Positions 2,546 to 63,642 of a stretch of 64,000 nt of DNA are shown here, piece after piece. Location: positions 186,001 to 250,000 of the IMG/VR virus record IMGVR_UViG_3300047476_002078, one strand, 5' to 3'. A program made the position numbers and the translations under genes. Position 1 is the stretch's first letter. The number at the start of each line of letters is the position of its first letter. Under the pieces are notes generated by a model. That model made no database searches. It was not told the origin of the DNA and was given only the letters and a program-made list of their open reading frames with translations.

Positions 2546-3178
2546 TTGATGGGTTCAATATTTGTTCAAGCTATTGATTCTAATGAATTAGAAGCACGAT
2601 TTAGCAATGATGACAGGTTAATGTACTTTGGTCAAAGTAAGTATTCTCTTGATGATGTAAAACCTTACTTGGCAATGCTACCGAAAAAAGAAGCTGATTT
2701 GATTTTGATGTATTACATACTTAAAAAAGATCAAAAAGAGATAGCAAAAATTTTAAATTTATCCCAAGGCGGAGTATCTCACCGAATCGCTCGTGCCCGT
2801 GAAAGACTTAAATTTCTTATTTCTATTCCTAAATTTTCTCGATCTGAACTATTTGAAGACCTAAAAAACATAATTGAAGAAGAAGTTGATTTAATTATCA
2901 TGTGGGAGCTTTATAAAACTACATGTCAAAGCCAAGTTGCGGAAGTTGTCGGAATGACCCAATCAAGAGTCAGACACCGCTTTATGAAGTCTTTAAAGAT
3001 ACTTGAAGATAAATCAGAAACATGTGAAAAATTAAAAATATACTTTGAAGCTTTTCACCAAATATCAAAAAATTTCAATATTCTGCATGAAATTAGTCTT
3101 CCTAAGTGGGCACATAAGAATAAGGACTACAAAGATATTCGTTTGAAGAATGTAAAGAAGGCTAAAAAATCGAAGTAA
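2546..3178 (+). CDS. Protein with two sigma70 region-4-like HTH domains
   Basis: LPKKEADLILMYYILKKDQKEIAKILNLSQGGVSHRIARARERLK is a typical sigma-4 HTH; second copy TCQSQVAEVVGMTQSRVRHRFMKSLKIL. No region 2 seen. Confidence 0.7.
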   Translation: MMGSIFVQAIDSNELEARFSNDDRLMYFGQSKYSLDDVKPYLAMLPKKEADLILMYYILKKDQKEIAKILNLSQGGVSHRIARARERLKFLISIPKFSRSELFEDLKNIIEEEVDLIIMWELYKTTCQSQVAEVVGMTQSRVRHRFMKSLKILEDKSETCEKLKIYFEAFHQISKNFNILHEISLPKWAHKNKDYKDIRLKNVKKAKKSK

Positions 3179-4088: not shown

Positions 4089-5555
4089 ATGTCAAAAAAC
4101 ACAATCGACAATTTTTTTAACGACGCTGTAGCAGACCATGAATGGTTGGATGCTAATGATAAGGTGAACGCACCTTTTAGCGATTACCCAAGCTACAATA
4201 AACTTCCTGAATTAGCTTTTCAAGAAATGCCTCAACCTTTACATAAAGATTTTTTGAAAACCAAAGAAGCTAACATTGAAAAGGTTTCCAACGAAGTTAA
4301 AAAACAACTTATGTTAGGAAAATCTTTAAAACATGTTAAAGAGTCTGTGATTGATAACTTACCTGTGTCTATTAAGGTTTCTGCTTATCATGAACTAACT
4401 AAAATCGCAGAAGAGTTTCCTTTATTAGGAACGGTGTATATTGAACCTTCAGCATTTGGAGATAATGCAAAAAGTTGTGTTAATGGGTCTAATATACTCA
4501 ATCAAAAAAATTCTAGTAAACTTGCTATCTATGCCAAAAAGATGGCTTCTTGCGGTGGATGCTCTTATAACCAAGGTGGGGTTTGCAGACTTTACAAAAA
4601 AGCCTTAGTAGAAGAAATTCCTTATACTGAAAAAACATTTAACCATTATAAAAATCATCTCGTAGTCGCAAATAAAGTCGCTTCATCAAAGCAAATAACT
4701 TCTAAAGAAGAGTTAAAAAACGCTTTAATGTCTATCAACAGTGTTAAAAAAGAAGCTTCATCTGTTGTTTACCACAATGAATCTAAGCGTACAGCTACTA
4801 CAAAATCAGCAACATATAATTTTGAAAATAAAGAAAAGATAGATATTTCAAAAGATTTATCTTTGAAACTCGCTTCGGGAATTGAAGCAAGTATTTTTAA
4901 AAATTATGTAACGACTAAATATTCTTCTGAGTATAAAAAATATCCTGAAGTTTTTTCTAAATATGCAGGATTTGTAGGAAGTTTAGGTCGAGTTTTTATT
5001 GAATTATCCGCTTTTAATTCTTTAGCAGAAGCTAAAAATTTTATTGTCAGAAATGCAAGTAAAGTTCCTTTTGTTTTATCTGATAACAAAAGAAAATATA
5101 CTGATCTTGATGAAAAATTCTTGGGTAAAAAAATCATATCTTCTTTAAAAGAAATCCCTATGAAATATTGGGAAAACAATTTAAAAGGTTTCTCTTTCAA
5201 TCCGTCTGATTTGAAGTCTAACCCTCTAGCTGTCACGAAAAAAGCTTTTCTCAAAACAGAGAAAGTCAAAACTGCTTCCCATGTAGAAACTTTTGATATG
5301 GAAAGAGAAATTGATATTAATGGTTTTGACCCATCGTATAATAATTCTGATAAAAAGATTCAACCTAAGATTAAAAAGGAAAGAGAAGTAAAAAGCTCCA
5401 AGCCCGTGCCTGCCGAAGGTTTTAAGAAATCAGCTACATCTTTAGTCGAAACTGTTAAAACAGAAGACGCAAAGGTTAAGGTTAGATTAGATAAATCATT
5501 AGAAGTTGAAATGGAATCAACTGATTTCGATCAGAGCATATCAAAATACTTATAA
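4089..5555 (+). CDS. Hypothetical protein with Cys cluster, rich in [KR]-x-A-[ST] motifs; possible head/internal protein
   Basis: 488-aa ORF; C..CGGC..C cluster; nine [KR]xA[ST] motifs; upstream of the terminase genes. Confidence 0.55.
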   Translation: MSKNTIDNFFNDAVADHEWLDANDKVNAPFSDYPSYNKLPELAFQEMPQPLHKDFLKTKEANIEKVSNEVKKQLMLGKSLKHVKESVIDNLPVSIKVSAYHELTKIAEEFPLLGTVYIEPSAFGDNAKSCVNGSNILNQKNSSKLAIYAKKMASCGGCSYNQGGVCRLYKKALVEEIPYTEKTFNHYKNHLVVANKVASSKQITSKEELKNALMSINSVKKEASSVVYHNESKRTATTKSATYNFENKEKIDISKDLSLKLASGIEASIFKNYVTTKYSSEYKKYPEVFSKYAGFVGSLGRVFIELSAFNSLAEAKNFIVRNASKVPFVLSDNKRKYTDLDEKFLGKKIISSLKEIPMKYWENNLKGFSFNPSDLKSNPLAVTKKAFLKTEKVKTASHVETFDMEREIDINGFDPSYNNSDKKIQPKIKKEREVKSSKPVPAEGFKKSATSLVETVKTEDAKVKVRLDKSLEVEMESTDFDQSISKYL

Positions 5556-15906: not shown

Positions 15907-16329
15907 ATGTGGGAAAATTTAATCGCTAAAGCGAGAACACTTGCAATGTACTATCATACAGCACATTGGCAAGTTCATGGTTCACTTTATTATTCAGATC
16001 ATTTACTTTTTGAAAGACTTTATAATTCTTCAACAGAAGACATTGATAAGCTTGCGGAAAGAGCTATAGGAATCACAGGCGATATTGGGGTTGTTAATTT
16101 GAATAACATCTTATCTTTGATGTGTGCGGAGGCTGTAAAGCTACCTTATGAGTGCAAAGAAAATATTCAATACGCTCAAGCAGCATTACTTTTAGAAAAA
16201 GACTTTATATCTTGTTTAAATGAATGTGAGGCTAATGCTGAATCCGCAGGAACTAAAGATTTGTTAGCAGGAATATCAGATAAACATGAAGAACATATTT
16301 ATCTTTTACAGCAAAGAGTTTCTAAATAA
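15907..16329 (+). CDS. Dps/ferritin-like protein
   Basis: HTAHWQVHG, HLLFERLY, DIDKLAERA and KHEEH give the Dps-type four-helix ferroxidase pattern. Confidence 0.75.
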   Translation: MWENLIAKARTLAMYYHTAHWQVHGSLYYSDHLLFERLYNSSTEDIDKLAERAIGITGDIGVVNLNNILSLMCAEAVKLPYECKENIQYAQAALLLEKDFISCLNECEANAESAGTKDLLAGISDKHEEHIYLLQQRVSK

Positions 16330-20194: not shown

Positions 20195-20233
20195 AAAAAC
20201 TCCTTAAATAGCTGCTTTTATTAGCCTCACTTA

Positions 20234-20277
20234 CTATACCGATTCCACTCATAGAGGCAATAGTGGAATCGGTATAG
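20234..20277. promoter_or_regulatory. Perfect 16-12-16 inverted repeat between divergent operons
   Basis: CTATACCGATTCCACT (20234-20249), spacer CATAGAGGCAAT, AGTGGAATCGGTATAG (20262-20277); imperfect extension to CTCA/TGAG. Confidence 0.85.
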
Positions 20278-20305
20278 CACTTGAGAAAAGGACAAAGGAG
20301 CCTGT

Positions 20306-36893: not shown

Positions 36894-38042
36894 CTAACCT
36901 GTGACGAGTTTCTTAATATCTTTGAGAATGAAATCCTTTGTTTGATTTAAAGATGAATTGTTTACTTGATAAGTTTTTGCTATTTCTTTGTTAGTTTTTC
37001 CGTTCAACATCATTCTAAATAATTTATATGTAACGTCTGACTGAGTATTCAAAAAGTATTTTCCTTCCACCATTTCAAAAAGCTCTGAATGATTTTCTTG
37101 AAAATAAGAAATTATAAACCAAGTTAAATTTTCAATTTGATCGAATACTAAGTGAGATTTAAAATTAGTTTGATAGACGTAAGGTTTCCCTTTTTTATAT
37201 CTCATAACAACTCTGTGTACAAAACCGTTAGATTCTAGCTCTGTAAGTATTTCATCTATCTTTTCAGAAGAATAATCTAAAACAGTTTTACATTCCATTA
37301 GCGTAGGCTGACAGTTTGATATGAAATTAAAAACGTCAGAAGCTTCGTAAGAGAGTTTGCTAAAATCTAAAATTCTTTTTTTAACCCCTGCTACATTTTC
37401 CCACAAGTTATTATTTTCCGAAGTTTCAATCGAACCTTTTTTAAACTTTTCCCAAATATCATACTTAATTTGATCTTTCTTTGGATGATAAGGATTAGAT
37501 TGAAAAGCTACTTTTTTGTCTTCTATAAAATTGCATATTTCTTTTGTACTTCTCGGTGTTTCAAAAAACTCCCATAGAGCACTATATATGGTTCCTTTTT
37601 TATAAGGATTATGAATTTTTAGATTTTTCTTTTTATGCTCTAAATGCTCTTTTATTTTTTCATCTACATCTAAAATTTCTAGTTTGTCTGAAAACGTGAA
37701 ATCAGAGTTGAAGTCTTTAATGTCAAGAATGGTTGTACCACTGTCTTCAAACATAGGAACATCAAGGCTGAGTGCGTGAGTTACCAACTCTTTATCTTCT
37801 TTAACTTTCTTACCTTTTAAGAACTTAAACAAATATGTGTAGAGATAGGTACTAAATTGAGCTTTTGTTGAATCATAAGTTTCAAAAAATTTCTTTTCTA
37901 ACAGATGTGCGTAAACATCGTTTTTAATCTCTGGTAACTCTTCAACTTTTATGTAGTTTTTGAAAGACCTACATAATATTCTTTCCAAGTCTTTATCATA
38001 TTTTTGGACAAATTCATCCAAAGTTTTACAAGGTCGTAGCAT
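36894..38042 (-). CDS. Sigma70-family factor with inserted winged-helix domains
   Basis: Region 2-like FFETYDSTKAQFSTYLY, region 3.2-like LSLDVPMFED, C-terminal HTH GKTNKEIAKTYQV; central insert with TrmB-like LSYEASDVF...LTELESNGFV.R..GKP..Y. Confidence 0.65.
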   Translation of the reverse strand: MLRPCKTLDEFVQKYDKDLERILCRSFKNYIKVEELPEIKNDVYAHLLEKKFFETYDSTKAQFSTYLYTYLFKFLKGKKVKEDKELVTHALSLDVPMFEDSGTTILDIKDFNSDFTFSDKLEILDVDEKIKEHLEHKKKNLKIHNPYKKGTIYSALWEFFETPRSTKEICNFIEDKKVAFQSNPYHPKKDQIKYDIWEKFKKGSIETSENNNLWENVAGVKKRILDFSKLSYEASDVFNFISNCQPTLMECKTVLDYSSEKIDEILTELESNGFVHRVVMRYKKGKPYVYQTNFKSHLVFDQIENLTWFIISYFQENHSELFEMVEGKYFLNTQSDVTYKLFRMMLNGKTNKEIAKTYQVNNSSLNQTKDFILKDIKKLVTG

Positions 38043-50269: not shown

Positions 50270-51118
50270 CTACTTGCCCTTTTTGTTTTTAGCTTTTTTG
50301 GCTAGGGCGGTGATTGATCTATTTATATCGCCACTTGTAGGAGTTGATATTGAAGTTACGGCTAAAGTTTCTTCTATGTAAAAATCATCTTTTTTACCTT
50401 GAAACTCGCTAGAACCTAAATTTACTTTTGGTAATTTTTGAATTCGATTACGTAAGTCAGAATCTACATGTTTATTTGTAACGGTTGGAGTTTTATTTAG
50501 AAACCAAATAGGTAAAAAGTTTCGCTCTCTATGGGTCATTAATTCACTCAAATGGGGAACATCTGAAACATTGAAATGACTTTCTTCTTCTAAATCAAAT
50601 ATCAATAATTTGTATCTATCTAATTGGTTAAAGTTACTACTATCACCATCAAATTTTAAACTACGCAAATCTGGGACAGTTAAAAATTTATAATCGAAAT
50701 CTGTGCATTTAAAGTCCCAAATTAAATCTCGTATAAATGTTTTTAAATGCAAACAAAAATGAGTGTATTCACTAATAACAAAAGAATGTGAAAGCATTTT
50801 TGTATTTGGGTTGTAGAGTTTTAACAAATGTGTTGTTTCAGGTGTTTCAAACTTTAATTGTTTTAGCCTGTTATCATAGTATAAGCTGGCTTTAAACTCT
50901 TTTTCGGCTCCACATCTTATTCTGAGAAAGTCTTTCTTTTTGTCATCCCAGACTCGATGAGATTCGTCGAATCTTGAAATTTTTTTACCGTATATTTTTA
51001 GGCAATACGGACAAAGCATAGATTCGTCTCTGTTTGAGGCATCATCGTTTGGTAATGAATTGAAAGCTTTTAAAGCTTCTTCTGCTACCTTCATAAGTTT
51101 TTTAATGTCATCTGCCAT
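50270..51118 (-). CDS. Degenerate DnaC/DnaI-like helicase-loader candidate
   Basis: N-terminal CPYC...C; KLLIFDLE (Walker B-like) and LSELMTHRE..LPIWF resemble DnaC/IstB; no Walker A seen; directly upstream of dnaB. Confidence 0.4.
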   Translation of the reverse strand: MADDIKKLMKVAEEALKAFNSLPNDDASNRDESMLCPYCLKIYGKKISRFDESHRVWDDKKKDFLRIRCGAEKEFKASLYYDNRLKQLKFETPETTHLLKLYNPNTKMLSHSFVISEYTHFCLHLKTFIRDLIWDFKCTDFDYKFLTVPDLRSLKFDGDSSNFNQLDRYKLLIFDLEEESHFNVSDVPHLSELMTHRERNFLPIWFLNKTPTVTNKHVDSDLRNRIQKLPKVNLGSSEFQGKKDDFYIEETLAVTSISTPTSGDINRSITALAKKAKNKKGK

Positions 51119-52670
51119 GAGCGTCTCTCACCATTTCATTGAAGAGGTTACTAGAAAAGTCTTCATCAAAAGCCAATTCTCCTGTTTTCATCTCTCCAAA
51201 AACCGAGGCTACCAATCCCTGTTTACTTTTTAGAGTCTTTAAAACGTGTTCATCAATCGTTTTACGGTTCACTAAATGAAGAACTAGGATGGAAGAATGT
51301 TCACTTCCTATCCTTTGTGCTCGTCCAACGAGTTGTAAATAATCACCGTAACTCCAAGGATTGTCAAAAAATATAAAAGTTGAAGCAATTTGTAAGTTAA
51401 TGGATTCACTTCCAGCACGGTTAATAAAAATAACATTGACACCGCTTTCTTTATCTTGGAAGGACTTTTTATTTTCTTCCCGTTCATCGGAGTCTTCATC
51501 TCCGGTGATGCGTGTCATTTTTATTTTTTTCTTATTAAAAAGTTCTTCAAATCTGTCGATCTGTTTTTTGAAATTAGTAAAGATGATTACTTTTTCATCA
51601 ATCAACTCATCTTCTAATAATCTAAACAGTTCTTCTTCTTTTGAAGAATCAGCATCAATTCCAACAATGTTTGGAGAATTAGAAATTTGTTGGCAATATA
51701 TTAACGCTGACAATCTTTCTACTTTCTTTTCTTCTCCATTATCGAGATTTAAAATACCTTGTAATGCCTCTTGATATATTTCTTCTTGCCTAGTTTTAAG
51801 CTCTAACTCAATCGTTTTGCTAATCAATACAGGCAATTCTTTTGCTACATCTTCTTTTTTTCTTCCTAAAAAATAAGGGTCAATATTTAGTCTGAACTGG
51901 TTCAAATTTTTGTACCCTACGACTTTTGGTATTTTTCTTTTAACTTTTCCAAAAACCATGGGCATTAACACAGTACGACAATAATCTTTTCGGAATTGAG
52001 TTATGTTCTTAAACAGTCCCGGAACTATCGCAGAATAAATAGAAAAAGCTTCTTCTAATCTGTTTTTAATGATTGTAGCACTTAGCCCTACAGACCTTTT
52101 TGCTTTGAATGACGTTTCTTTTACGGCTCTAAAAGTTATAGTCTTTTGATTTTTAAAATATGAAGCCTCATCAAAAATAACCATGTACTCCCCTAATTGA
52201 GGTACTAAGGTTTCATATTCTTCAATCAAAGTATTGTAATTCATAATCATTACATCTACGTTGTTTTTGAAGAACTCTGATATTTGATATTTGCGTGATT
52301 CCCCTGATTTTAAAACAACTTTATCTACTTTTACGGTGAAAGAGCCTATGACTTGTGCTGTCAAAACCGTAAATTTTTCAACTTCAGACTTCCATTGATA
52401 CAAAGCAGACTTTGATGCAATAACTAATAATTTTAAATTACGGTTTTTTTCTTTTTGGTAGCAAAAGGCTGCTAAAGATTGAAGAGTTTTTCCAAGACCT
52501 GCCGCATCCCCTAGAACCATTCGAGAACATGCTATTAGGTGATACACTCCTATAGCTTGATAGTTTCTAAGTTTGACTTCTTGTTTTATTAATGCACAAT
52601 GTTTTAGAACAAGATTGTCTTGTTGTCTTATTTCTAAAAGGCGTGTATAGTTTTCTGGAACAGGGAGCAT
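51108..52670 (-). CDS. SNF2-family (SF2) helicase
   Basis: LRNYQ, LGDAAGLGKT, IFDEAS, GLSAT...N...E, GSESINLQ.A...F...W, Q..GRAQRIG. Confidence 0.92.
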   Translation of the reverse strand: MLPVPENYTRLLEIRQQDNLVLKHCALIKQEVKLRNYQAIGVYHLIACSRMVLGDAAGLGKTLQSLAAFCYQKEKNRNLKLLVIASKSALYQWKSEVEKFTVLTAQVIGSFTVKVDKVVLKSGESRKYQISEFFKNNVDVMIMNYNTLIEEYETLVPQLGEYMVIFDEASYFKNQKTITFRAVKETSFKAKRSVGLSATIIKNRLEEAFSIYSAIVPGLFKNITQFRKDYCRTVLMPMVFGKVKRKIPKVVGYKNLNQFRLNIDPYFLGRKKEDVAKELPVLISKTIELELKTRQEEIYQEALQGILNLDNGEEKKVERLSALIYCQQISNSPNIVGIDADSSKEEELFRLLEDELIDEKVIIFTNFKKQIDRFEELFNKKKIKMTRITGDEDSDEREENKKSFQDKESGVNVIFINRAGSESINLQIASTFIFFDNPWSYGDYLQLVGRAQRIGSEHSSILVLHLVNRKTIDEHVLKTLKSKQGLVASVFGEMKTGELAFDEDFSSNLFNEMVRDAHGR

Positions 52671-53646: not shown

Positions 53647-53988
53647 ATGGAGTTTGTTGATACACTTCCAAAGTTAGAAATTGATTTAGAAAATCAAAAA
53701 TTAAGAATTTCCGATTTAGAAGTAAAACTTATAAAAAAGTTACTTATTGATTCTGATAAAATTATTGTTGAAAAATACAGGGTTTTTGTCCCTGATTTTA
53801 AGTTTGAAAATGATTGGGAAAATTTCATAGGTTCGGATACCGTGAGTCAAGATGAAGCTGTAGAAGATTGGGATAAACAACCAAGCCATGTTTTTCTTGA
53901 TAGAAAATCCAGAAAACCTCTTCTTTATACATTCATAATCGACAAAGAAAACAAATTATTTTTTGAAAGCAAAAGAGTTGAAAGCTAG
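53647..53988 (+). CDS. Hypothetical protein
   Basis: Start moved to ATG 53647 after the previous stop; GGGAG upstream. Confidence 0.55.
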   Translation: MEFVDTLPKLEIDLENQKLRISDLEVKLIKKLLIDSDKIIVEKYRVFVPDFKFENDWENFIGSDTVSQDEAVEDWDKQPSHVFLDRKSRKPLLYTFIIDKENKLFFESKRVES

Positions 53989-54007
53989 GTTTAACTAACC
54001 TAGCTTT
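53981..54007. terminator. Probable bidirectional intrinsic terminator
   Basis: AAAGCTAGGTT-taact-AACCTAGCTTT perfect 11-bp stem spanning two convergent stop codons. Confidence 0.65.
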
Positions 54008-54348
54008 TTATTTATTTCTTGATTGAACTTATTTTTAAAGTGATTAAAAGATGAGATTATTTCAGGGTAATAGATAGCTATTTTTTGATAGTATGGATTT
54101 TCAAAGTCAGAATTAAAACTTTCATGAATATTTTTTAAATTCTTTTTACATTCTTCAAACTGCATTTCTATTTTTTCTTTATTTTCTAAAGAACAGTTGG
54201 TAAGTCTTTTTTCATATCTACTGATTTGAGGTATTTCAGATTGCAGTATATGTATCTTGTTGTGCATTTCATTAAGAAACTTTTGTAAGGACATTAGCCC
54301 AAAACGTAAAGGTCTTCCGCAAACTTCACAACAAGAACTACCTGCCAT
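53995..54348 (-). CDS. Hypothetical protein with N-terminal CxxC knuckle and coiled coil
   Basis: SCCEVCGRPL at the N-terminus. Confidence 0.5.
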   Translation of the reverse strand: MAGSSCCEVCGRPLRFGLMSLQKFLNEMHNKIHILQSEIPQISRYEKRLTNCSLENKEKIEMQFEECKKNLKNIHESFNSDFENPYYQKIAIYYPEIISSFNHFKNKFNQEINKKLG

Positions 54349-54352
54349 GCTT

Positions 54353-55354
54353 TTAACCTAATCTGAGTAATATTTTTGAAGCTATTTTTTTCTTAGCTAC
54401 TAATATTTCTCTAGCATCTTCAAAAGAAGATAACTCTAGTTTTTTGAAAATCTTTCCTAAATCTTTAACGAAGTATTGAACAAAATCTGAAAACTTTTTA
54501 TCGTCCATATTTAGTTCGTTCATGAATTTCTTTTGATCTGCTTTAACAAACGGGTCGAATCCGTCAGCTATGAGATTTAAAGCCTTTTCATATAAAGGAT
54601 TTAACTTTTTAACTTCTTGATAAAGTTCTTTTTTTATAGCTTTTGCTTCGTTTTTAGTGTGGCTTGATTCATCTTGAAAAAGTTTATCTTCTCTCACTCC
54701 ATCAAATGACTCATCATCTCTTGATATTATCCTTACGGCAGTATTAAGAGCATCTTCTGTTTTGTTAGTTTTTTCTAAAATTTTGATAGCCATATTTTTT
54801 GCAGCCGTGTACCAAAATTTAGTGAAAGAACCTATTGAAGGATTGTAGCTCTTAAATATAGCGTCTCTTATTCTTTTACCTTGCATTACTTTTTCAGGAC
54901 TAATTTTTTTTGTTGGTGTTTTTTCACCGTCATAAAATTTCTTTAAATAAGACAAATCTGGTATGTTGTATTCTTTGGATAGACTAACAATCCAGTCATT
55001 ATCAATTATTTGTTCAAAGCTTAAACCTTTTGATTTAAGGTTTATGACAGCTACAGGAAGCATTTGAAATTTTAAGTATTTGTAATCAAACTTTTTTTCT
55101 TCATCTGTAAGATTTGGGAATATTAAACGATGTACAGCATCTATAGCTATATGTTCATAATAATCTTTAGCTCCTGCATCTTTGGCAGCTTTGAACGCTA
55201 AGTTCATTAAATTTGTATTTTTAGGTAAGTTTATTTCGTGTTCTTTTGCTAACTCAATTAACATATTGTTAAATCTAGTTATTTCTGCGTTTGCAAAAAT
55301 CTTTCGTTTAATTTTTTCAAAAACTGAGTTTGCTATTTTTTTATAATTTATCAT
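54353..55354 (-). CDS. Divergent ECF-like sigma factor candidate
   Basis: FKSYNPSIGSFTKFWYTAAKNMAIKIL resembles region 2.3-2.4; AKD...EHIAIDAV resembles 2.1-2.2; C-terminal LYEKALNL.ADG..QKKFMNELNM resembles a sigma-4 HTH. Confidence 0.5.
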   Translation of the reverse strand: MINYKKIANSVFEKIKRKIFANAEITRFNNMLIELAKEHEINLPKNTNLMNLAFKAAKDAGAKDYYEHIAIDAVHRLIFPNLTDEEKKFDYKYLKFQMLPVAVINLKSKGLSFEQIIDNDWIVSLSKEYNIPDLSYLKKFYDGEKTPTKKISPEKVMQGKRIRDAIFKSYNPSIGSFTKFWYTAAKNMAIKILEKTNKTEDALNTAVRIISRDDESFDGVREDKLFQDESSHTKNEAKAIKKELYQEVKKLNPLYEKALNLIADGFDPFVKADQKKFMNELNMDDKKFSDFVQYFVKDLGKIFKKLELSSFEDAREILVAKKKIASKILLRLG

Positions 55355-58300
55355 AACTTACCTAGAGGTCTTCCTTTAATTTTGAATAAATCAAACGAGT
55401 TATTTGAAGAGAAATCAGAGTTGGTTATTTCAACGCTTGTTTCTGTAGTCATTCTTGTTTCAACTCTTAAAACGTACTCACCTCTTTCAAAATTTCCTGT
55501 AGGGTCTTCTAAAACTTGTTCGAGCATAAACATAACAGTTTGTTTCTTAACAGAGTTAATAGTATCCATACCAACTGAATAGAAATTTGAACCTTTAAAA
55601 GTACCTCGGTTATTGATTACATTATCTTTAGAAATGTAATTTTCTCTGCCTGATACATAAGGTTGTACTCTAGTCGAGGTTTCATCGTTAATACCAGAAA
55701 CAATAGGCACGTCAAAAGAATAGGCTCTGTTTTTGAAGAAATTGATACCTGCCCCGTCACTTAAAGGATAGCTTCCTTTTTGACGTAAAAATTTCATAAT
55801 TCTTTGTTCTTTTTGACCATACCAAATTTCTCCATCTTGAGGAGCCACAACATTTGGATTATCTATTTCAATATATGGAGGAATGATATTAAACCCATAA
55901 ACTTTTTCCGAAGGAGAGTTTACTAAACTAATAAATTTAACTCTAACAACTGTGGTAGATGAAGAATCTCCTCCAGTTCTTGAAGTAAACTCTAATCTAT
56001 TCCAACCTGTTACAAAATTTAAAGCTTCGTAAGAATGGAATGTATCGTCTTCACAAATTAAGTGCATTGAAAAGTTTTCAACTTTAGATTGATCTGGTAT
56101 AAAAACCCAGTAAACTAAACGGCTTCCAGCCACTACATTTCCATCAACATCAATTAGTGCTGACCAGTCATTGTAAAATGTTTCTTTTGAAATCTCTGCA
56201 AGACTTCCGCTTGTTCCTGTTTTGTTAAATCTTAAAGTAGGTCTTAGATACATACTTCTAATATCATCTGTTCTGATTCCAGACGTATCTAAATTATCAG
56301 ATTCCCAGTCATGAAGAACTTCAAAATCATTGCTAGAAAACCCTCCGCTTATTGTGTAGTCAGCGTCAAGACTTATGCCTTTATGATAAGGGTAAATTTC
56401 TGCACCTAAAGGTTCGTTTCCTAAATCAGAATCTTTATCTGAGAAAGCCTTTGGTAATTTTACAGAGATAGGGGAATAAGCATCTGGAACGGTAGAGTTA
56501 AATCCATTTGTTCCAGAAGTGTGAACTAAGAACCCTCTTGCTTGATCTATCAAACGTGTTCTTACGAATGAATTTACTCCATTACCAAATGATTGCTTCG
56601 CAGTAACTCCTTGGTATGGCGTAAACATATAAAAAATTTGTAATTGCTGATTTGAATCTAAAGCTTTTGATCTATTTACTGTGATAGAAATTGTGTTGTT
56701 TTGACTTACTCCTATAGGAGAATCAAGTTGAACAGTAATAAAATTTCCATCAATAGTGGTAGTACATGGAGTTGCAAGACCATCAATGTAACAAATGTCT
56801 TGGTAGGTGCTTAAAGATAACTTTTCAGATTGAGCAGAATAGATAATTCCTGTAGAAGCAATCGTTATTTGAGTTAAATTTTGCCCGTTAAGAACAGTCT
56901 TACTTAAAATTTCAATTTGAGAAAGATTTGTAATAGATTTGGTTTTTTCTTGAATAAGAGCAGCATTATTAGCAAGACCTACTGCAAAAACCATAGGAGT
57001 ATTTACAGGTACAGCGTTATTAAAAATAACTGTAATCGTATTATCAAAATTTTGATTTATCTGTTGTATGCTCAATGGAGAAGTTGATCTGGAAATTAAA
57101 GTTCCACTGACTGTAATATAATGAACATGAGTAATAGGGATAGTGCCGTAATTGGCAGGTAGTGTATAACTTTGAGTACCGTCTCCAAATACTTGTAAAA
57201 ATCCTAAAGTAGTGAATCCTTCTTTTTCATTCTTCCCGATTCTGTAGTCTTGTGCTGTTAAATTTGAAACTAAAGAACCTGATCTGATTCCATCAAGATC
57301 ATTTTCGGATACAAAGCTAAAATTAACATTGTCACGTACTTCAAAAATTCTTTTTATTTCAGTTGGAACGAATGTTAATCCGTTTCCATTAGGATAAGCA
57401 ATTTCATACTCAACATAAAGCTGTTGATTAGAAACACCTGTAGGAACTTCTCCTAGTGTTATGATTAAAGCTGTATCCCCAACAGGTTCAATTACACTTG
57501 GAATTTCAACTTTTGATTCAGAAGCTCCTGATTTTACAACTGCGAAAACCTTTAAAGGGTTTCTTCCAAATGTCGTTCCTACTGGGTTTGAACCAAGCAA
57601 GTTTAGATTGAATTGATCTCCTAGAGTCCAGTTGATACCTTTAACTTCTGTTCTATCAGTAAGAGAGAATCTTTGAATTGTTTTTTGAATTGTGTCAGCA
57701 TCACTGAATACACGTCTTTGACCATTTGGGGCAGCTATGTCTAATGCTCCAGTCTGGTCAACTGTGGAAATACCATCTACATGAAGACCTGTAGCATTAA
57801 ATGATAAATCTGCTCCTAGAACAGATTCAGTTAAAACAGTATTTAGGTTTCCTTCGAGTAGGCTTTTAAAAGCAAAATCAAGTTGATGTGTATTTACACT
57901 AATAACGCAAGTATGTCTTAAATCTTCAATATCCCCGATTTCTATTTTATCGTTAAAATATCCGTCTGGTCTGTCTGAATTTCCTTGAGCAATTGTTTTT
58001 CCTGCTCCGTTAAGATTCAGTAAACTAAAAGGGGAAGCGTTTCTTCTGTGTATTCTAAAAAGAGGTATAGCGTATGAATAACCATCAACTGTACCTAAAT
58101 CTGAAATAGAAGAAGAGTCTCCATTACCTGCTCTGTATAGTCCGGAATCATCTAATGCTTTTTCAAAAGAATAAGCTAAACTCGTATTCCCTCTTCCTGC
58201 TTGAGCTTTGACGTTGTTAGTGTCAAGAATACCTTCAGGAAAACCTGCAAAATTAACTCCAGTGACTACACGGATACGATACTGCATTTGAACACGTTGC

Positions 58301-58857
58301 GTAGTATCTGTTCCGATAGGGCTGTAATAAATGTCATCATCAAGATGTTCCATTCCGCTTTGGACGTTACCAAATTTATAAATTTTTCCACTTTCAGGAC
58401 GGTTTGCTAAAGAGTTTGGAAATAATTCTTGATACCACACTTCAAGAAAAACTAAATCTTGTCTTGAACCTGAAGATGGAGCGGGAGGCAAAGTAATTGC
58501 TAGTTTTGATTGATCGCTTGTATTAGTTCCGCCAACATCAAGAACTTCACCTAAAACATTAACCTTAAATGGTAGTCCAAGAAAATTTCTTACTATAAAT
58601 TGATTGGGAGTTTCAGTTAAGTTTACTCCGTAGGCGTTACCATTATTATCATATCCAATTTCAAAAGCGTTTACATCCATAGGATAGAAACCGCTCGTCA
58701 TTAGCTCACGAACTTGCATTTTATTTAAGTCGTGTGCTAAATCTCCAACGAAGTTAAGTTCTGAATCCAGAGGCGGTTTACTTGGTTTGAAAATTACACT
58801 TCTGTAGCTTGTGTTGTTTGATTCAAGAGTTCTAGTTGTTCCAGTATAACTTTTCAT
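55351..58857 (-). CDS. Large virion structural protein (baseplate/fibre-associated), paralogue 1
   Basis: N-terminal F.P.KPPLDSELN reminiscent of DUF6519-type proteins; D.VFLEVW, R.Q.QYRIRV, LGTVDGY.YA.P; beta-rich body. Confidence 0.65.
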   Translation of the reverse strand: MKSYTGTTRTLESNNTSYRSVIFKPSKPPLDSELNFVGDLAHDLNKMQVRELMTSGFYPMDVNAFEIGYDNNGNAYGVNLTETPNQFIVRNFLGLPFKVNVLGEVLDVGGTNTSDQSKLAITLPPAPSSGSRQDLVFLEVWYQELFPNSLANRPESGKIYKFGNVQSGMEHLDDDIYYSPIGTDTTQRVQMQYRIRVVTGVNFAGFPEGILDTNNVKAQAGRGNTSLAYSFEKALDDSGLYRAGNGDSSSISDLGTVDGYSYAIPLFRIHRRNASPFSLLNLNGAGKTIAQGNSDRPDGYFNDKIEIGDIEDLRHTCVISVNTHQLDFAFKSLLEGNLNTVLTESVLGADLSFNATGLHVDGISTVDQTGALDIAAPNGQRRVFSDADTIQKTIQRFSLTDRTEVKGINWTLGDQFNLNLLGSNPVGTTFGRNPLKVFAVVKSGASESKVEIPSVIEPVGDTALIITLGEVPTGVSNQQLYVEYEIAYPNGNGLTFVPTEIKRIFEVRDNVNFSFVSENDLDGIRSGSLVSNLTAQDYRIGKNEKEGFTTLGFLQVFGDGTQSYTLPANYGTIPITHVHYITVSGTLISRSTSPLSIQQINQNFDNTITVIFNNAVPVNTPMVFAVGLANNAALIQEKTKSITNLSQIEILSKTVLNGQNLTQITIASTGIIYSAQSEKLSLSTYQDICYIDGLATPCTTTIDGNFITVQLDSPIGVSQNNTISITVNRSKALDSNQQLQIFYMFTPYQGVTAKQSFGNGVNSFVRTRLIDQARGFLVHTSGTNGFNSTVPDAYSPISVKLPKAFSDKDSDLGNEPLGAEIYPYHKGISLDADYTISGGFSSNDFEVLHDWESDNLDTSGIRTDDIRSMYLRPTLRFNKTGTSGSLAEISKETFYNDWSALIDVDGNVVAGSRLVYWVFIPDQSKVENFSMHLICEDDTFHSYEALNFVTGWNRLEFTSRTGGDSSSTTVVRVKFISLVNSPSEKVYGFNIIPPYIEIDNPNVVAPQDGEIWYGQKEQRIMKFLRQKGSYPLSDGAGINFFKNRAYSFDVPIVSGINDETSTRVQPYVSGRENYISKDNVINNRGTFKGSNFYSVGMDTINSVKKQTVMFMLEQVLEDPTGNFERGEYVLRVETRMTTETSVEITNSDFSSNNSFDLFKIKGRPLGKL

Positions 58858-58861
58858 TATT

Positions 58862-61800
58862 TTAAACCTTCTGATTTATACTCAGTCTTCTGTTTTTAGT
58901 GTAAAAGAAATCCGCAGCTATTACGACACGGTTAGCTTCATTCAAGGTTCCCTCTAAGCTAGTAACCTCTAAATTATTGTTAAAAATTAAATGATTAGCT
59001 GAACCGACTTTTAGTAAGTTAAATTCAGGTCTATTCACACTCTCGATATTTGATGTGGTGGTTATGACAAAAGACAAAAGCTCTCCTTCTAAAACGCCTT
59101 TTCCTATAGCTAAACCGTGAATAATATTTAAAGTATTGCTTCCAGTTCTATATTTTATAACCACTTTATCAGTCAGAGCAGGAGCTTCCCTTAAAACAAT
59201 CATTCCTTCATTTCCAAAAACTTCCAGAATATCTTCTGGTTCTAGTTCTACACCATTTTTCACTACAACTAAATCAGGTGCATATATTTCCCAATCTGCC
59301 GTTGTTGAAGATTCTGAAAAAGGAGTTTTAATTACTAAGGTCGCATCATCGGTAATTTTTGAAACTTCATACCAAGTAGTAGAACCCATAGGTCTGATTA
59401 AATAGCCCGGTCTTAAAGAGCGTGTGAAAAAAGCGTTTAATCCGCTTACTGTAGTTGAGGCATTGTTGAAAACAGCTAATCCTACCATTTTCCAAGTACG
59501 ACTTAAACATACGGTATTATAAATAGCCATTATTTTTCTTGAAACTTTAAATATTCTGTTTCCACCATTTACTTGTAAAGTTACGTTCTCTTCTAACCTT
59601 TCAACAAGGTCGTCAACTCTGTACGAAATTTTTGGAGAATTTAAAGAACATCCTCTTTGTACGGCGTATGGAGAAGCATCACTTTCTTTTTTAAGAACTA
59701 AAGTGTCTCCAATTTTAAGAGATTTTGTTTCAGGATAACCGTCATATCTATAAGTTAATTCTTTGATACTTCCAATAGCTTTGCTGTTAGGAATCAAAAG
59801 ATTTGAATTATCTAGCTGGTAGTCATAATCCGTTGAGTTTAACGGAAGCCTTGTGGAAATTCCGTAGATACCTTCACTGATCTGTGATGGAATTTGTGGA
59901 GCACCTTCATAATTTTTAGGATTGCTACTGCCTGTACCATTAGTTGTTATTTTTGCATTGTCGCACAAATAAACAACTTCAGCTTCTAATGTTTCACCTG
60001 TTGAAATTAAGCTACTAAGACCTTGATAAGGAACATAATCGTAGGTGATTGTGTATTGGTCTGTAGCTAAAGGGGCAAAGCTACCTATCATAGGAATGTA
60101 GATAATTTTTCCTGCTTCAGGAGCTAATGGAAAGTTAATCGTAATTCGTGATGAATTTAAGCCTATAACAGAGCTTATTTCAACCCACTTACCATCGCTT
60201 GTTTGAGTGTCTGCTACGTAAGCGTGAGCCTTATAAGAACTACCGTCGTAAAGCCCTGCCACTCCATAAACAAATTCCATTTTGTTTAAAACTTGAGTGA
60301 CTGGTGAAATGTTATATTGATTTGCCCCTGTTGAGGTCAGTTGATACATCAAGGTCTGAGAAAAATTTTCTAAACCTTTGTTCTTTCTATTTATCTCACA
60401 AGCATATCCACTCATTAAGACAGTTACTTTTATAATGTCATTTAAAGTCGGGAAATAAGATTGAAAATTTATTTCAAAAGACCCGTCAGCACGTCTTAAA
60501 ACTTTAGGATTGTTGGAAAATCCTAATGGTATGTCTTGCCCACCTGAAAACTGCACTCTTCCAATTGTGAGAACAGTTCTTCCATCAATAGTAGAAGGTA
60601 TAGTTACTTTGCCTGAACCGTTTCCAGTAATGTGGTAAACTCTCTCAATGACACCGCCTCTAAAATTTTCTTGTTGAGAGGTAGGGTTTATAAATCGGCT
60701 TACTGGAAAAATTGTTTGAGAGTCTCTCCAAGTGCCTTGAACTACTCTATTTAATTCTTGTGATATTACTTTTTCATCTTCAGTGAAAACTACATCCGTA
60801 GCTTTCATATCATCTCTTATATTATAAACATTTCTAGGTATTTGAAAAAGTCCGGAACCCGAAGGAATCACTAAATCATATTCTATGATGATAGGTTTTC
60901 CTGCTAAGTCTCCAGCGGCGGATGGTCTGAAAGTGACTTTATCTTTATTTGTTCTGTCTCCGAGATTAGACCAACCATTAATTCCCACATTGGCAGGGAT
61001 TATTTCTAGCCCTGTCTGAGCGTTATATATCTTTGGAACATTTTCTGCTCCTATAAATGGATTGTAACTTCTATACTGTTCAGAATCAGTTACCGTGTAA
61101 AATTGCGGAGGAAATATTTCTAATTGGTTTACCGAATTTAAAGTAGCGGCAGCTAAATAAATTACAGTTCTTTGAGTTTTTTCAGAGTCAGTAAAATTTC
61201 TTTTTACGTTGTTAGGTCTGCGTAAAAAACTCTCATTGATATTTGGTCGATCTGTTGCTGAAATACCGTCAATTTGGATATTAACTGAAGAAAAAATATC
61301 AGGTCGATCTCCTAATATTAATCTGTCAGGGATACCTCTAATAAGATTATCGAAAGATTCCTCACAAATAGCTTTTAAATCTTCTTCTATGGCTACAGTG
61401 TGTCTTAAATCTTCTATGTCAAAACGATATATTTCATCTCCGAAAATACCGTCAGGTCGATCTGAATTTCCTTGTGATAAAAGCTTGGAAGCTCCATTTG
61501 GATTTGAATTTGAATAGATTGTTTTATTTTTTCTGTGAAGGCTACATAAAGGCAATGCGTACACATATCCATCTACAGTTCCAAGATCATTTGCAGACTG
61601 TTCTGTTCCATTCCCTGCTACATAATGACCCATCTCTGTTTTTTGGAAAACATAGTTAGGATTTGAGACAGGTAAACTTTTAGCACCTTGCCCAAAAATA
61701 GACGGATGCCCTAATCCTTCTCGATAAGATACTAAATCTACCCCTTCTGAGACTCTAATTCGGTACTTAGTTTGTACTCGAACGGAGGTTTCTCTATTTA

Positions 61801-62323
61801 CGGAAGGGTCAATCAAATCATTCGTAAAAGGAGATAAAGCGGTTTGAGCATTTCCAAATTTGTTGATAGCACTTGAAGGGTTTACTAACTCGTCCCACAC
61901 TTCTAAGAAAACGACATCATCTCTGGAACCTGATTCAGGTCCATCTCCAACAAGAAAAACTAATTCATCTTCTTGGTTTGATAAAATCTTCCAGATGTTA
62001 TCAGAAGCTCCAATTTGGAATTGGTTTGTACCTGCTCCCAAGAACAATATTTTTCCATTGATTAAAACTAAAGGGTTTTTAATCTTGATGGCATTTTTCC
62101 AAAAACTACTTCCGTTTTCAGGTCGAGTAGTGATCTCACCACGAGTAATGAAACCAGATTTGTGAAAAGACCGTAAAATATCACTAATAATAGTATTTTG
62201 AATATTTTGAAGTAAATTGAACTCAGAGTCCAAAGGCGGTCTAAGTGGTTGAAAAACAACTGAATTAAAAGATTTATCTTTTGCTTCAAGAACTCTTGAG
62301 ACTTTGTTTCCTAATTTCTGCAT
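58862..62323 (-). CDS. Large virion structural protein (baseplate/fibre-associated), paralogue 2
   Basis: Shares PPLDSE.N, DDVVFLEVW, LGTVDGYVYA.P and QGNSDRPDG...DIEDLRH blocks with the adjacent gene. Confidence 0.65.
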   Translation of the reverse strand: MQKLGNKVSRVLEAKDKSFNSVVFQPLRPPLDSEFNLLQNIQNTIISDILRSFHKSGFITRGEITTRPENGSSFWKNAIKIKNPLVLINGKILFLGAGTNQFQIGASDNIWKILSNQEDELVFLVGDGPESGSRDDVVFLEVWDELVNPSSAINKFGNAQTALSPFTNDLIDPSVNRETSVRVQTKYRIRVSEGVDLVSYREGLGHPSIFGQGAKSLPVSNPNYVFQKTEMGHYVAGNGTEQSANDLGTVDGYVYALPLCSLHRKNKTIYSNSNPNGASKLLSQGNSDRPDGIFGDEIYRFDIEDLRHTVAIEEDLKAICEESFDNLIRGIPDRLILGDRPDIFSSVNIQIDGISATDRPNINESFLRRPNNVKRNFTDSEKTQRTVIYLAAATLNSVNQLEIFPPQFYTVTDSEQYRSYNPFIGAENVPKIYNAQTGLEIIPANVGINGWSNLGDRTNKDKVTFRPSAAGDLAGKPIIIEYDLVIPSGSGLFQIPRNVYNIRDDMKATDVVFTEDEKVISQELNRVVQGTWRDSQTIFPVSRFINPTSQQENFRGGVIERVYHITGNGSGKVTIPSTIDGRTVLTIGRVQFSGGQDIPLGFSNNPKVLRRADGSFEINFQSYFPTLNDIIKVTVLMSGYACEINRKNKGLENFSQTLMYQLTSTGANQYNISPVTQVLNKMEFVYGVAGLYDGSSYKAHAYVADTQTSDGKWVEISSVIGLNSSRITINFPLAPEAGKIIYIPMIGSFAPLATDQYTITYDYVPYQGLSSLISTGETLEAEVVYLCDNAKITTNGTGSSNPKNYEGAPQIPSQISEGIYGISTRLPLNSTDYDYQLDNSNLLIPNSKAIGSIKELTYRYDGYPETKSLKIGDTLVLKKESDASPYAVQRGCSLNSPKISYRVDDLVERLEENVTLQVNGGNRIFKVSRKIMAIYNTVCLSRTWKMVGLAVFNNASTTVSGLNAFFTRSLRPGYLIRPMGSTTWYEVSKITDDATLVIKTPFSESSTTADWEIYAPDLVVVKNGVELEPEDILEVFGNEGMIVLREAPALTDKVVIKYRTGSNTLNIIHGLAIGKGVLEGELLSFVITTTSNIESVNRPEFNLLKVGSANHLIFNNNLEVTSLEGTLNEANRVVIAADFFYTKNRRLSINQKV

Positions 62324-63037: not shown

Positions 63038-63115
63038 TTTGAAAACATTTAATATTTATTTTTGATTACAAAGGGAAATATTAAAACCCTTTTGCCGGAC
63101 TAATTCGGTCTTTCT

Positions 63116-63530
63116 CATGAAGAACATGAAACATAAGCATGAGTTGTTTTTGTTATTTCTCCTACTACCGTTTTTTCTTCTTTAGCTTTTCTTCTAGCAA
63201 GTTACCTGCCCCCTCAGAGTCTCATAGGTTTAGTCTTTTGGAGAGTATAGTATTAAATACATCATCTCCCTAGCATCCTAATACAGGTGAGTTGCAATTT
63301 GATTATTCATAAAAAAATATTCAATTGCAATAGTATAGTTGAAAATTTTTTAAAATTTTTATTTTACGGTATTTTGTTAAATTATTTACGGTAATCTATA
63401 ACGTACTATGTTAAATTTAACAGAATTAATAACACGTATTGTTATTTTATTTTGCCATGAAGAACATGAAACATAAGCATGAGTTGTTTTTGTTATTTCT
63501 CCTACTACCGTTTTTTCTTCTTTAGCTTTT
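63116..63530. repeat. Two identical 75-bp direct repeats 340 bp apart
   Basis: CATGAAGAACATGAAACATAAGCATGAGTTGTTTTTGTTATTTCTCCTACTACCGTTTTTTCTTCTTTAGCTTTT at 63116-63190 and 63456-63530. Confidence 0.95.
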
Positions 63531-63642
63531 TTAATGCTTAAAAAAGAAAGAGAGAGATAATATATAATATAATATAGTAAAACATATATTGTTCTAATTT
63601 GACTTATTTTGTCAGGATAATAAATAAAGATTTTACGGTAAA
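63363..63642. promoter_or_regulatory. Cluster of TTTAC-G-GTAAA palindrome copies
   Basis: TTTACGGTAtt 63363-63373, TTTACGGTAAt 63384-63394 (21 bp apart), perfect TTTACGGTAAA 63632-63642. Confidence 0.55.

What the first reader, a model, noticed from the sequence alone, without database searches (positions are those of the whole stretch)
54353..55354. Second sigma-like gene at the end of a structural operon, with K-x-A-[N/S] motifs at both termini
It overlaps the stop of the 1168-aa virion gene, has an ~85-aa insert between regions 2.2 and 2.3, begins YKKIANS and ends KKKIASKILL, echoing the motif seen in head-region proteins. Hypothesis: a late-expressed, capsid-packaged and processed sigma factor injected to start early transcription with host RNAP, a lighter alternative to the virion RNA polymerases of phiKZ and N4.
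Basis: inference. Interest (0 to 1): 0.6.

Follow-up and report, generated by a model that had tools for sequence, protein, structure and literature searches.

The report
Divergent sigma factor in jumbo phage
This gene of a 356-kb freshwater jumbo phage most likely encodes a very divergent sigma factor that redirects the host's RNA polymerase, with an unusual ~86-residue insertion in its core-binding domain; nothing found here supports the idea that it is packed into the virion and injected.

Summary
The ORF is real: window 54353-55354, minus strand, 333 aa. Its ATG overlaps the stop of the 1168-aa gene (ATGA). It begins MINYKKIANS and ends KKKIASKILLRLG. Pfam and PHROGs are blank. It belongs to a small family (24 representatives among 1.84 billion proteins). 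12 of 21 members give sub-threshold hits to the sigma-70/ECF superfamily model and 4 hit Pfam Sigma70_r2. An AlphaFold model (pLDDT 72) searched against about 48,000 PDB chains returns mostly sigma factors: sigma-2 domains on residues ~26-207 and sigma-4 domains on ~232-316, at modest Z (5-6.7). No beta/beta'-type RNA polymerase was detected, so a sigma for host RNAP is the best reading. The block (two giant paralogous DUF4815-like genes, the sigma-like gene, a 117-aa gene, a terminator) is conserved down to 26% identity. Other family members sit in integrase or resolvase islands without the giant genes. The terminal K-I-A motifs are family-wide and also occur in those islands, which argues against phage-specific cleavage sites. 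Packaging and injection remain untested and unsupported. This is a new variant of a known kind.

The parts
54353..55354 (-). Target gene, 333 aa (P0001): divergent sigma-70-family (ECF-like sigma-2 + sigma-4) protein
   Evidence: ORF and translation; homolog family of 24 representatives; sub-threshold sigma HMM hits; fold matches
55118..55279 (-). Residues ~26-79: N-terminal helices of sigma-2 (regions 2.1/2.2-like; 'YYEHIAIDAVHRLIF' pairs with ECF 'ADDVFQATFLKLH')
   Evidence: VIA sigma-2 matches start at model residue 26-30; hhalign after deleting the insert aligns 45-79 to ECF regions 2.1/2.2; pLDDT 75-93
54860..55117 (-). Residues 80-165: ~86-aa insertion inside sigma-2, four short helices, conserved 'LKsKGlSfEqI' and 'KPNK' segments; fold not assigned
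   Evidence: Alignment A2; model secondary structure; sigma-2 matches align only 72-85 residues over a 180-residue span; deletion test
54734..54859 (-). Residues 166-207: region 2.3/2.4-like loop and helix ('FKSYNPSIGSFTKFWYTAAKNMAIKILEK'; F167, F177 and N187 nearly invariant)
   Evidence: TIGR02937 alignment from profile position 42; conservation; hhalign; pLDDT ~90
54407..54661 (-). Residues 232-316: sigma-4-like helix-turn-helix domain ('KKLNPLYEKALNLI...FMNELNM...')
   Evidence: VIA matches to sigma-4 of the phiEco32 sigma complex (9m7y_F, Z 6.7, rmsd 3.0, 76 aa), SigH, SigL, CnrH, SigW and sigmaE region 4; hhalign collinear with ECF region 4
55328..55342 (-). N-terminal KKIAN (residues 5-9), in a low-confidence helix
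   Evidence: [KR][ILVM]A within the first 22 aa in 14/21 family members; pLDDT below 50
54377..54394 (-). C-terminal KKKIAS (residues 321-326), in a low-confidence helix
   Evidence: [KR][ILVM]A in the last 45 aa in 12/21 members; pLDDT below 50
55351..55354 (-). ATGA stop/start overlap between the 1168-aa gene and the target (translational coupling)
   Evidence: Sequence; overlaps of 4, 1 and 4 nt in relatives L007, L010 and L032
55351..58857 (-). Giant gene B, 1168 aa; beta-rich; N-terminus DUF6519/DUF4815-like; probable virion (tail-fibre-like) protein, unproven
   Evidence: no Pfam or PHROG hit
58862..62323 (-). Giant gene A, 1153 aa, paralog of gene B (27% identity over ~900 aa, E 4e-65)
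53995..54348 (-). 117-aa helical protein starting 4 nt after the target's stop; conserved only in the jumbo-phage members; candidate partner or co-factor (inference)
53980..54008 (.). Bidirectional intrinsic-terminator-like hairpin that closes the operon

Best explanation
The gene encodes a highly divergent member of the sigma-70 superfamily with ECF-like architecture (sigma-2 plus sigma-4, no sigma-3). Its sigma-2 domain is interrupted by an ~86-residue helical insertion between the region 2.2 helix and the loop and helix of regions 2.3/2.4. The phage has no detectable RNA polymerase of its own. The protein therefore most likely binds the host RNAP core and directs it to a class of phage promoters, as one of several phage transcription factors. 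The others are a sigma-4-only protein at 2546-3178, a NusG/UpxY-like protein at 1868-2539, and possibly a third sigma-like ORF at 36894-38042. The gene is co-transcribed and translationally coupled with two giant, probably tail-fibre-like, paralogous genes and a conserved 117-aa gene. Shown: the ORF, the operon layout, the family, its conservation and its synteny. Supported at moderate strength: the sigma fold, the sigma homology and the position of the insert. Inferred: binding to host RNAP core, promoter specificity, and timing of expression.
For: Sequence. TIGR02937 (sigma70-ECF) gives 18 bits, E 0.0017, at residues 166-261; the 30%-identical P0004 hits the same profile positions. 12/21 family members hit it (best E 7.6e-6) and 4 hit an RpoE-like model. 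4/21 hit Pfam Sigma70_r2 (best 1.9e-5), and no other family recurs in more than two members. P0009 carries a precomputed faint Sigma70_r2 hit. hhalign against a 41-sequence ECF alignment is collinear from region 2.3 to 4.2, and extends into regions 2.1/2.2 only when residues 80-165 are removed. Structure. The AF2 model has pLDDT 72, with domains at 75-93. In a Foldseek-independent search of 48,161 chains, about 30 of the top 50 rows are sigma factors. Sigma-2 domains map to residues 26-207 (2mao Z 6.0; 5uxx_C Z 5.8, rmsd 2.7; 3ugo Z 5.6; T4 gp55 7d7d_F Z 5.0). Sigma-4 domains map to 232-316 (9m7y_F Z 6.7; 3mzy 5.9; 3hug 5.8; 4cxf, 5wuq, 2h27). Sigma chains also head the non-significant Foldseek list. 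Context. No beta' or beta domain in the 356-kb genome and no DxDGD motif in ORFs of 80 aa or more. RNAP-less jumbo phages are known to rely on their own sigma factors (PMC7824862, PMC13282480). Family members also occur next to an ECF sigma and integrases in mobile islands, so the protein works independently of the giant genes.
Against: No curated threshold is reached (18 bits against a 42.9-bit cut-off; Pfam is blank for the target itself). hhalign probability is only 2.7-3.6% and pairwise E 0.012-0.017. Structural Z scores of 5-6.7 lie in the range the tool warns can reflect generic helical arrangements. Foldseek and Atlas shape searches show nothing significant. A profile search of PDB sequences found no sigma factor. 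Docking to the E. coli beta' clamp helices gave no verdict. The host is unknown and no promoter could be assigned to the protein. A sigma gene translationally coupled to presumed late structural genes is an odd place for an initiation factor.
Confidence: 0.6

Rival explanations
1. One reading: the sigma-like protein is made late with the virion genes, targeted to the capsid, trimmed at the K-x-A-[N/S] motifs at both ends by the prohead protease, and injected with the DNA. There it lets host RNAP start early phage transcription at phage-specific promoters.
For: Translational coupling to probable virion genes, conserved down to 26% identity. K-x-A-[N/S] at both termini is unlikely by composition (3.7e-4, post hoc). 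Both termini are predicted to be flexible (pLDDT below 50). One ORF near the terminase carries six copies of the motif. The phage has a private, non-sigma70-like 16-nt promoter-like motif in front of ~33 small, early-looking genes, and some phage-specific factor must read it.
Against: No virion data exist, and no cultured relative carries the gene. The terminal [KR][ILVM]A segments are conserved across the family, including members in integrase, resolvase and R-M islands without giant genes; the [N/S] position is not conserved. The motif is not enriched genome-wide, and the cited 'head-region' proteins include NusG-like and sigma-4 proteins. The whole region is collinear in relatives, so the adjacency carries little specific information. 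The literature searched shows no precedent. The virion nature of the giant genes is itself unproven.
Confidence: 0.05
2. The protein has a sigma-derived fold but does not act as an initiation factor. It could be a DNA-binding transcription regulator, or an RNAP-binding modulator (for example a sigma competitor or appropriator) that uses its HTH domain. The 117-aa neighbour could be its partner.
For: Sigma-4-like HTH folds are shared with many regulators (one search also lists RepA, StyR and TFIIB-type winged helices at similar Z). The sigma-2 domain is disrupted by a large insertion next to the -10 recognition loop. Curated sigma thresholds are not met. A 117-aa gene is co-conserved downstream in the phage clade.
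Against: The region 2.3/2.4 signature residues (F177, N187, aromatic FW) are nearly invariant in the family. Both sigma domains are present in the canonical order with a linker. The phage lacks its own RNAP and needs promoter-specificity factors.
Confidence: 0.2
3. The protein is unrelated to sigma and is an assembly chaperone or accessory for the two giant fibre-like proteins. Genes directly downstream of tail-fibre genes often have that role. The sigma resemblance would then be a generic all-helical similarity.
For: Its position immediately downstream of, and translationally coupled to, the giant genes, conserved in at least four lineages. The similarity statistics to sigma factors are weak.
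Against: At least four family members (P0004, P0008, P0009, P0012) lack the giant genes nearby. The giant-gene family is large (more than 850 hits) while the sigma-like family is tiny (24 representatives), so most giants do without it. The sigma hits are recurrent, collinear and two-domain, and rest on independent sequence and structure methods. There is no match to any chaperone family.
Confidence: 0.12

Closest known systems
ECF-type (group 4) sigma-70 family factors, e.g. E. coli sigmaE, M. tuberculosis SigL, SigH and SigK
   Same: Two-domain sigma-2 + sigma-4 architecture without sigma-3. Region 2.3/2.4 signature 'F..(d/n)p..gsF..W...a.N'. Region 4 'Lp...r.....' followed by an HTH. These are the best structural matches and the only recurrent HMM hits.
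   Different: About twice the size (333 vs ~170-200 aa). An ~86-aa insertion between regions 2.2 and 2.3. ~25-residue N-terminal and ~15-residue C-terminal extensions with conserved K-I-A segments. An extra ~10-residue insertion inside region 4. Scores fall below every curated cut-off.
Phage-encoded sigma factors for host RNAP: phiEco32 gp36 (PDB 9m7y, PMC12276001), T4 gp55, SPO1 gp28/gp34, and the 'complete' sigma factors of group 2 jumbo phages (PMC7824862)
   Same: A phage gene product with a sigma fold in a phage that has no RNAP of its own. 9m7y chain F is the top sigma-4 match (Z 6.7), and T4 gp55 matches the sigma-2 part (Z 5.0). I take chain F to be the phiEco32 sigma from the abstract of PMC12276001; I did not verify the chain assignment.
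   Different: No detectable sequence relationship to those proteins (no tblastn hit in 50,697 phage records). The gene sits in an operon with giant structural-looking genes, unlike the early or middle regulatory position recalled for those phages (from my own knowledge). It carries the sigma-2 insertion.
Injected virion proteins that reprogram transcription: T4 Alt, N4 vRNAP, phiKZ/AR9 virion RNAPs
   Same: Only the idea: these are the known ways a phage brings its own transcription specificity in with its DNA (from my own knowledge; PMC13282480).
   Different: Those are enzymes or whole polymerases with proteomic proof of packaging. Here there is no evidence of packaging, and the protein would need the host's core enzyme.
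Group 1 sigma non-conserved region (NCR) and other sigma insertions
   Same: A lineage-specific helical module inserted into the sigma-2 region.
   Different: The NCR lies between regions 1.2 and 2.1 (from my own knowledge). Here the insertion lies between 2.2 and 2.3, next to the loop that ECF sigmas use to read the -10 element.

Membership tests
Sigma-70 superfamily (ECF-like, group 4) | Score above the curated family cut-off (TIGR02937 42.9 bits; Pfam Sigma70_r2/r4 gathering scores) | tested here: not met
   Target scores 18 bits, E 0.0017 on TIGR02937; Pfam gives no sigma hit for the target. In the family, 12/21 members match below the cut-off with best E 7.6e-6, and 4/21 hit Sigma70_r2 with best E 1.9e-5.
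Sigma-70 superfamily (ECF-like, group 4) | Sigma-2 domain fold (helices of regions 2.1-2.4) | tested here: met
   VIA-align: 2mao Z 6.0; 5uxx_C Z 5.8, rmsd 2.7, 75 aa; 3ugo Z 5.6; 4nqw Z 5.4; 8b3z Z 4.8, all on model residues 26-207. Z is modest and the domain is split by an insertion.
Sigma-70 superfamily (ECF-like, group 4) | Region 2.3/2.4 sequence signature (aromatic/W and invariant N in the DNA-melting helix) | tested here: met
   'NPSIGSFTKFWYTAAKNMA': F177 and N187 are at least 90% conserved in A2. It aligns to TIGR02937 from position 42 and to ECF 'F.PWLFTICRS' by hhalign.
Sigma-70 superfamily (ECF-like, group 4) | Sigma-4 helix-turn-helix domain C-terminal to sigma-2 | tested here: met
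   Model residues 232-316 match 9m7y_F (Z 6.7, rmsd 3.0), 3mzy, 3hug, 4cxf, 5wuq, 3vep, 2h27 and 5fgm. The hhalign alignment is collinear with ECF region 4. Z is modest.
Sigma-70 superfamily (ECF-like, group 4) | Statistically significant profile-profile homology | tested here: inconclusive
   hhalign A2 vs A5: E 0.017, probability 2.7%, 105 columns. With the insert removed: E 0.012, 147 columns.
Sigma-70 superfamily (ECF-like, group 4) | Binds RNAP core (sigma-2 to the beta' clamp helices, sigma-4 to the beta flap) | tested here: inconclusive
   Complex prediction with RPOC_ECOLI 220-345 gave no verdict (score 0.00). The host is unknown.
Sigma-70 superfamily (ECF-like, group 4) | Confers promoter-specific initiation | not testable with these tools
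   Candidate phage promoter motifs were found, but none can be assigned to this protein.
Capsid-packaged, protease-processed, injected proteins (T4 Alt / internal-protein type) | Present in purified virions | not testable with these tools
   The phage is uncultured. No relative was found in GenBank phage records or IMG/VR.
Capsid-packaged, protease-processed, injected proteins (T4 Alt / internal-protein type) | Terminal targeting or cleavage motif shared with head proteins of the same phage and specific to that phage's protease | tested here: not met
   The motif is near the rate expected from composition genome-wide. The terminal K-I-A is conserved in family members from non-phage islands, and the [N/S] position is not conserved. 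The proteins cited as head-region include NusG-like and sigma-4 proteins. Only ORF 4089-5555 is enriched, and its function is unknown.
Tail-fibre assembly chaperones | Similarity to known chaperone families, and strict co-occurrence with the fibre gene | tested here: not met
   No Pfam or PHROG chaperone hit. Four family members lack giant genes nearby. The giant family has more than 850 members against 24 representatives for this family.

The most novel reading that the evidence does not exclude
The sigma-like protein is a virion cargo. It would be made with the tail-fibre-like proteins, packaged and injected, so that host RNAP core can immediately read the phage's private 16-nt promoters (GTGGAATCGGTATAGC) in front of the cluster of small early-looking genes. 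That would be an injected promoter-specificity subunit in place of an injected polymerase. The evidence does not exclude this, but nothing found here supports it beyond operon position and flexible, motif-bearing termini.
Probability: 0.05. Interest if true: 0.85.

Novelty: new variant of a known kind. Interest (0 to 1): 0.42.

Why it matters
Most jumbo phages lack their own RNA polymerase and are thought to reprogram the host enzyme with phage sigma factors, yet few of these factors have been characterised. This family escapes all curated models and is rare (24 representatives in 1.84 billion proteins). It carries a sizeable insertion next to the loop that ECF sigmas use to read the -10 element. 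It could therefore show how sigma-2 tolerates, or makes use of, an extra module, perhaps to read an unusually long contiguous promoter. It also adds a case where a sigma-like gene is locked into an operon with giant structural-looking genes. That raises a testable question about the timing and purpose of its expression. If the packaging idea were true, it would be a new host-takeover strategy.

Tried and rejected
- Pfam and PHROGs on the target: nothing usable.
- tblastn against 50,697 GenBank phage records: no match.
- IMG/VR scans with family alignments: none, or no pattern could be built.
- Profile search of PDB sequences: no sigma factor, only chance-level hits.
- Foldseek against PDB: nothing significant.
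- ESM Atlas shape search: TM below 0.25, uninformative for a multi-domain model.
- hhalign of the family against single sigma sequences: uninformative.
- Complex prediction of sigma-2 (residues 21-210) with E. coli beta' 220-345: no verdict. It counts neither for nor against binding.
- AlphaFold of the giant protein's N-terminal 420 aa: pLDDT 47, so it was not used for fold search.
- Pfam on the giant N-termini at E up to 10: nothing.
- Promoter typing of the operon: the 16-nt motif is absent upstream of it. The TACCGTAAA motif is half intragenic and often tandem, so it is ambiguous. -10-like k-mers gave no clean class.
- The exact 16-mer in IMG/VR: only single chance-level hits, so no co-occurrence test was possible.
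- T7-type RNAP search: no hit, but the control rang nowhere, so it is inconclusive.
- Metatranscriptome contigs: they show the locus in RNA libraries, including one contig across the boundary between the target and the 117-aa gene, but cannot prove transcription, level or timing.

Full report
**The observation.** The window is part of a complete 355,874-bp virus record with direct terminal repeats, i.e. a jumbo phage. It was recovered from freshwater and lake metagenomes. The finding's coordinates hold a 333-aa ORF on the minus strand. Its ATG (55354-55352) overlaps the TGA (55353-55351) of the 1168-aa ORF upstream. A 117-aa ORF starts 4 nt after its stop, and a bidirectional terminator-like hairpin follows at 53980-54008. 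K-x-A-[N/S] occurs exactly twice, at residues 6 and 323.

**Is it sigma-like?** Pfam and PHROGs give nothing, and no GenBank phage has a relative. A word-based search found three relatives. An exhaustive profile search of 1.84 billion representatives found only 24, nearly all full-length at 320-380 aa.

- NCBIfam's sigma70-ECF superfamily model hits the target at 18 bits (E 0.0017; cut-off 42.9) over residues 166-261. It hits the 30%-identical P0004 at the same profile positions.
- Across the 21-member alignment A2, 12 members hit this model (best E 7.6e-6) and 4 hit an RpoE-like model.
- Four members hit Pfam Sigma70_r2 (best E 1.9e-5), and no other family recurs in more than two members.
- An AlphaFold model built on A2 has mean pLDDT 72. 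Domains score 75-93; both termini and the linkers score below 50.
- Foldseek finds nothing significant, though sigma chains head its list.
- The Foldseek-independent VIA search of 48,161 chains returns a top 50 in which about 30 rows are sigma factors. Sigma-2 domains fall on model residues 26-207 and sigma-4 domains on 232-316, with Z of 5-6.7. The tool warns that such Z values can be generic for helical proteins.
- What persuades me is the agreement of two independent methods on the same two domains in the canonical order.
- A profile-profile comparison with a 41-sequence ECF alignment is collinear from region 2.3 to 4.2 but statistically weak (E 0.017, probability 2.7%).

I rate sigma homology at about 0.75, and function as a sigma factor for host RNAP at about 0.6.

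**The insertion.** Three lines place an ~86-residue insert at residues 80-165.

- The HMM alignment begins at profile position 42, the loop after the region 2.2 helix, at residue 166.
- Sigma-2 structures of 80-100 residues align only 72-85 residues across a 180-residue span of the model.
- Deleting 80-165 from A2 extends the hhalign alignment from 105 to 147 collinear columns. It then pairs residues 45-79 with ECF regions 2.1/2.2, while same-length control deletions do not extend it. The score barely changes.

The insert contains conserved segments (LKsKGlSfEqI, KPNK), and its fold was not assigned. From my own knowledge, the loop just after the insert corresponds to the -10 specificity loop of ECF sigmas. 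An effect on promoter reading is thus conceivable, but it is inference.

**Context.**

- The gene is the third of a tight minus-strand block: giant A (1153 aa), giant B (1168 aa), the sigma-like gene, a 117-aa gene, and a terminator.
- The giants are paralogs (27% identity, E 4e-65).
- They have no Pfam or PHROG hit.
- They resemble DUF6519/DUF4815 by language-model features (0.93). DUF4815-like phage proteins are variously annotated as virion, baseplate, neck or tail proteins (PMC8341000).
- They share an N-terminal domain with phage G gp211 and with a Tunturi_5 protein annotated as tail fiber and located among tail genes.
- Their family has more than 850 unnamed members, on contigs of up to 480 kb.

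'Structural' is therefore plausible but not shown; my fold of the N-terminus was too poor to use. The four-gene block, including the start/stop overlap, recurs in relatives at 96%, 33% and 26% identity. In the 26% relative the downstream replication module (SNF2, DnaB, primase, sugar-modification genes) is collinear as well. The adjacency may therefore simply reflect conserved genome order. Other family members lie in integrase, resolvase or R-M islands or among small genes, without giants. The 117-aa protein is conserved only in the phage clade.

**Transcription strategy.**

- No beta' or beta domain and no DxDGD motif were found. A T7-type search was negative but its control failed.
- The phage encodes a confirmed sigma region-4 protein (2546-3178). 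Next to it are a NusG/UpxY-like protein (1868-2539) and a clamp loader.
- A 382-aa ORF beside the DNA polymerase gives a weak sigma region-2 hit plus an HTH match.
- This fits the published picture of RNAP-less jumbo phages that use minimal and fuller sigma factors (PMC7824862; PMC13282480).

**The packaging hypothesis.**

- The strict motif is near the rate expected from composition genome-wide.
- Both-termini occurrence is unlikely by shuffling (3.7e-4), but that test is post hoc.
- [KR]-[ILVM]-A occurs near the N-terminus in 14/21 members and near the C-terminus in 12/21. It includes island-borne members, and the [N/S] position is not conserved. These are inherited family features, and that argues against cleavage sites tuned to this phage's protease.
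- The 'head-region' proteins are partly transcription factors. Only the unassigned 488-aa ORF 4089-5555 is truly enriched, with six copies.
- No virion proteome or cultured relative exists, and I found no precedent in the papers searched.
- Metatranscriptome contigs lie on the giant gene, on the target, and across the boundary between the target and the 117-aa gene. They cannot show timing.

I put the hypothesis at about 5%.

**Verdict.** This is a real gene and a new, rare and very divergent variant of the sigma-70 family, with an insertion in sigma-2. It most likely acts as a host-RNAP specificity factor.

Noticed in passing
window 20233-20248 (-) and 20263-20278 (+); otherwise genome C1:116,000-166,000 (outside the window): A 16-nt motif, GTGGAATCGGTATAGC, followed by N3-4 YGARA, occurs about 36 times (up to 2 mismatches). 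Nearly all copies are intergenic, co-oriented with the downstream gene, and end ~20-30 nt before an ATG, with a GGAGG Shine-Dalgarno sequence between. They cluster in front of small ORFs. It looks like a phage-specific promoter unlike sigma-70 consensus. The exact 16-mer occurs only as single chance-level hits in other IMG/VR contigs. The factor that reads it is unknown.
   Followed up: partly
window 63363-63371, 63385-63393, 63632-63640 (-); 53 copies genome-wide: TACCGTAAA(A/T) is enriched upstream of genes and often occurs in tandem 12-22 nt apart. Three copies lie in the 680-nt region upstream of the target's operon. Half of all copies are intragenic. It may be an operator or a promoter element.
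   Followed up: partly
window 63111-63190 and 63451-63530: An 80-nt direct repeat (98% identical, spacing 340 nt) in the long intergenic region upstream of the operon. No Rfam match.
   Followed up: partly
window 475-3178 (+): A clamp loader (475-1893), a NusG/UpxY-like KOW protein (1868-2539) and a 210-aa protein with one clear and one weak sigma region-4 stretch (2546-3178) lie side by side. This looks like a transcription accessory cluster reminiscent of T4's clamp-dependent late transcription.
   Followed up: partly
window 36894-38042 (-): A 382-aa ORF next to the DNA polymerase gives a weak sigma70-ECF hit over profile positions 3-111 (E 0.0028) and an Lrs14/Sta1-like HTH hit at residues 246-298. 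It may be a third divergent sigma-like factor.
   Followed up: partly
window 4089-5555 (+): A 488-aa ORF just upstream of the terminase region has six K-x-A-[N/S] motifs (about 0.4 expected) and a Cys cluster (CGGCSYNQGGVC). It has no family match. It could be a protease substrate or a scaffold-like protein.
   Followed up: partly
window 55351-62323 (-): The two giant paralogs belong to a family of more than 850 unnamed proteins of 830-1800 aa, found on contigs up to 480 kb. Their N-domain is strongly conserved (PPLDSE, FLEVW, RVQ.QYRIRV, SDRPDG, DIEDLRH) and is shared with phage G gp211. It is a widespread, uncharacterised huge-phage protein.
   Followed up: partly
L010:12312-15362 (relative's contig): The SNF2 helicase ortholog in the 26%-identity relative carries an intein with a LAGLIDADG endonuclease (1016 aa). 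The window's copy has no intein (520 aa at 51108-52670).
   Followed up: no
window 15907-16329 (+): A ferritin/Dps-like 140-aa protein is encoded at the end of the terminase-portal gene block.
   Followed up: no
genome C1:306688-307590 (-), outside the window: A 300-aa ORF with repeated HTH stretches resembling the CRISPR repeat-binding protein Cbp1 (E 8.6e-7) and weak sigma-4 hits.
   Followed up: no
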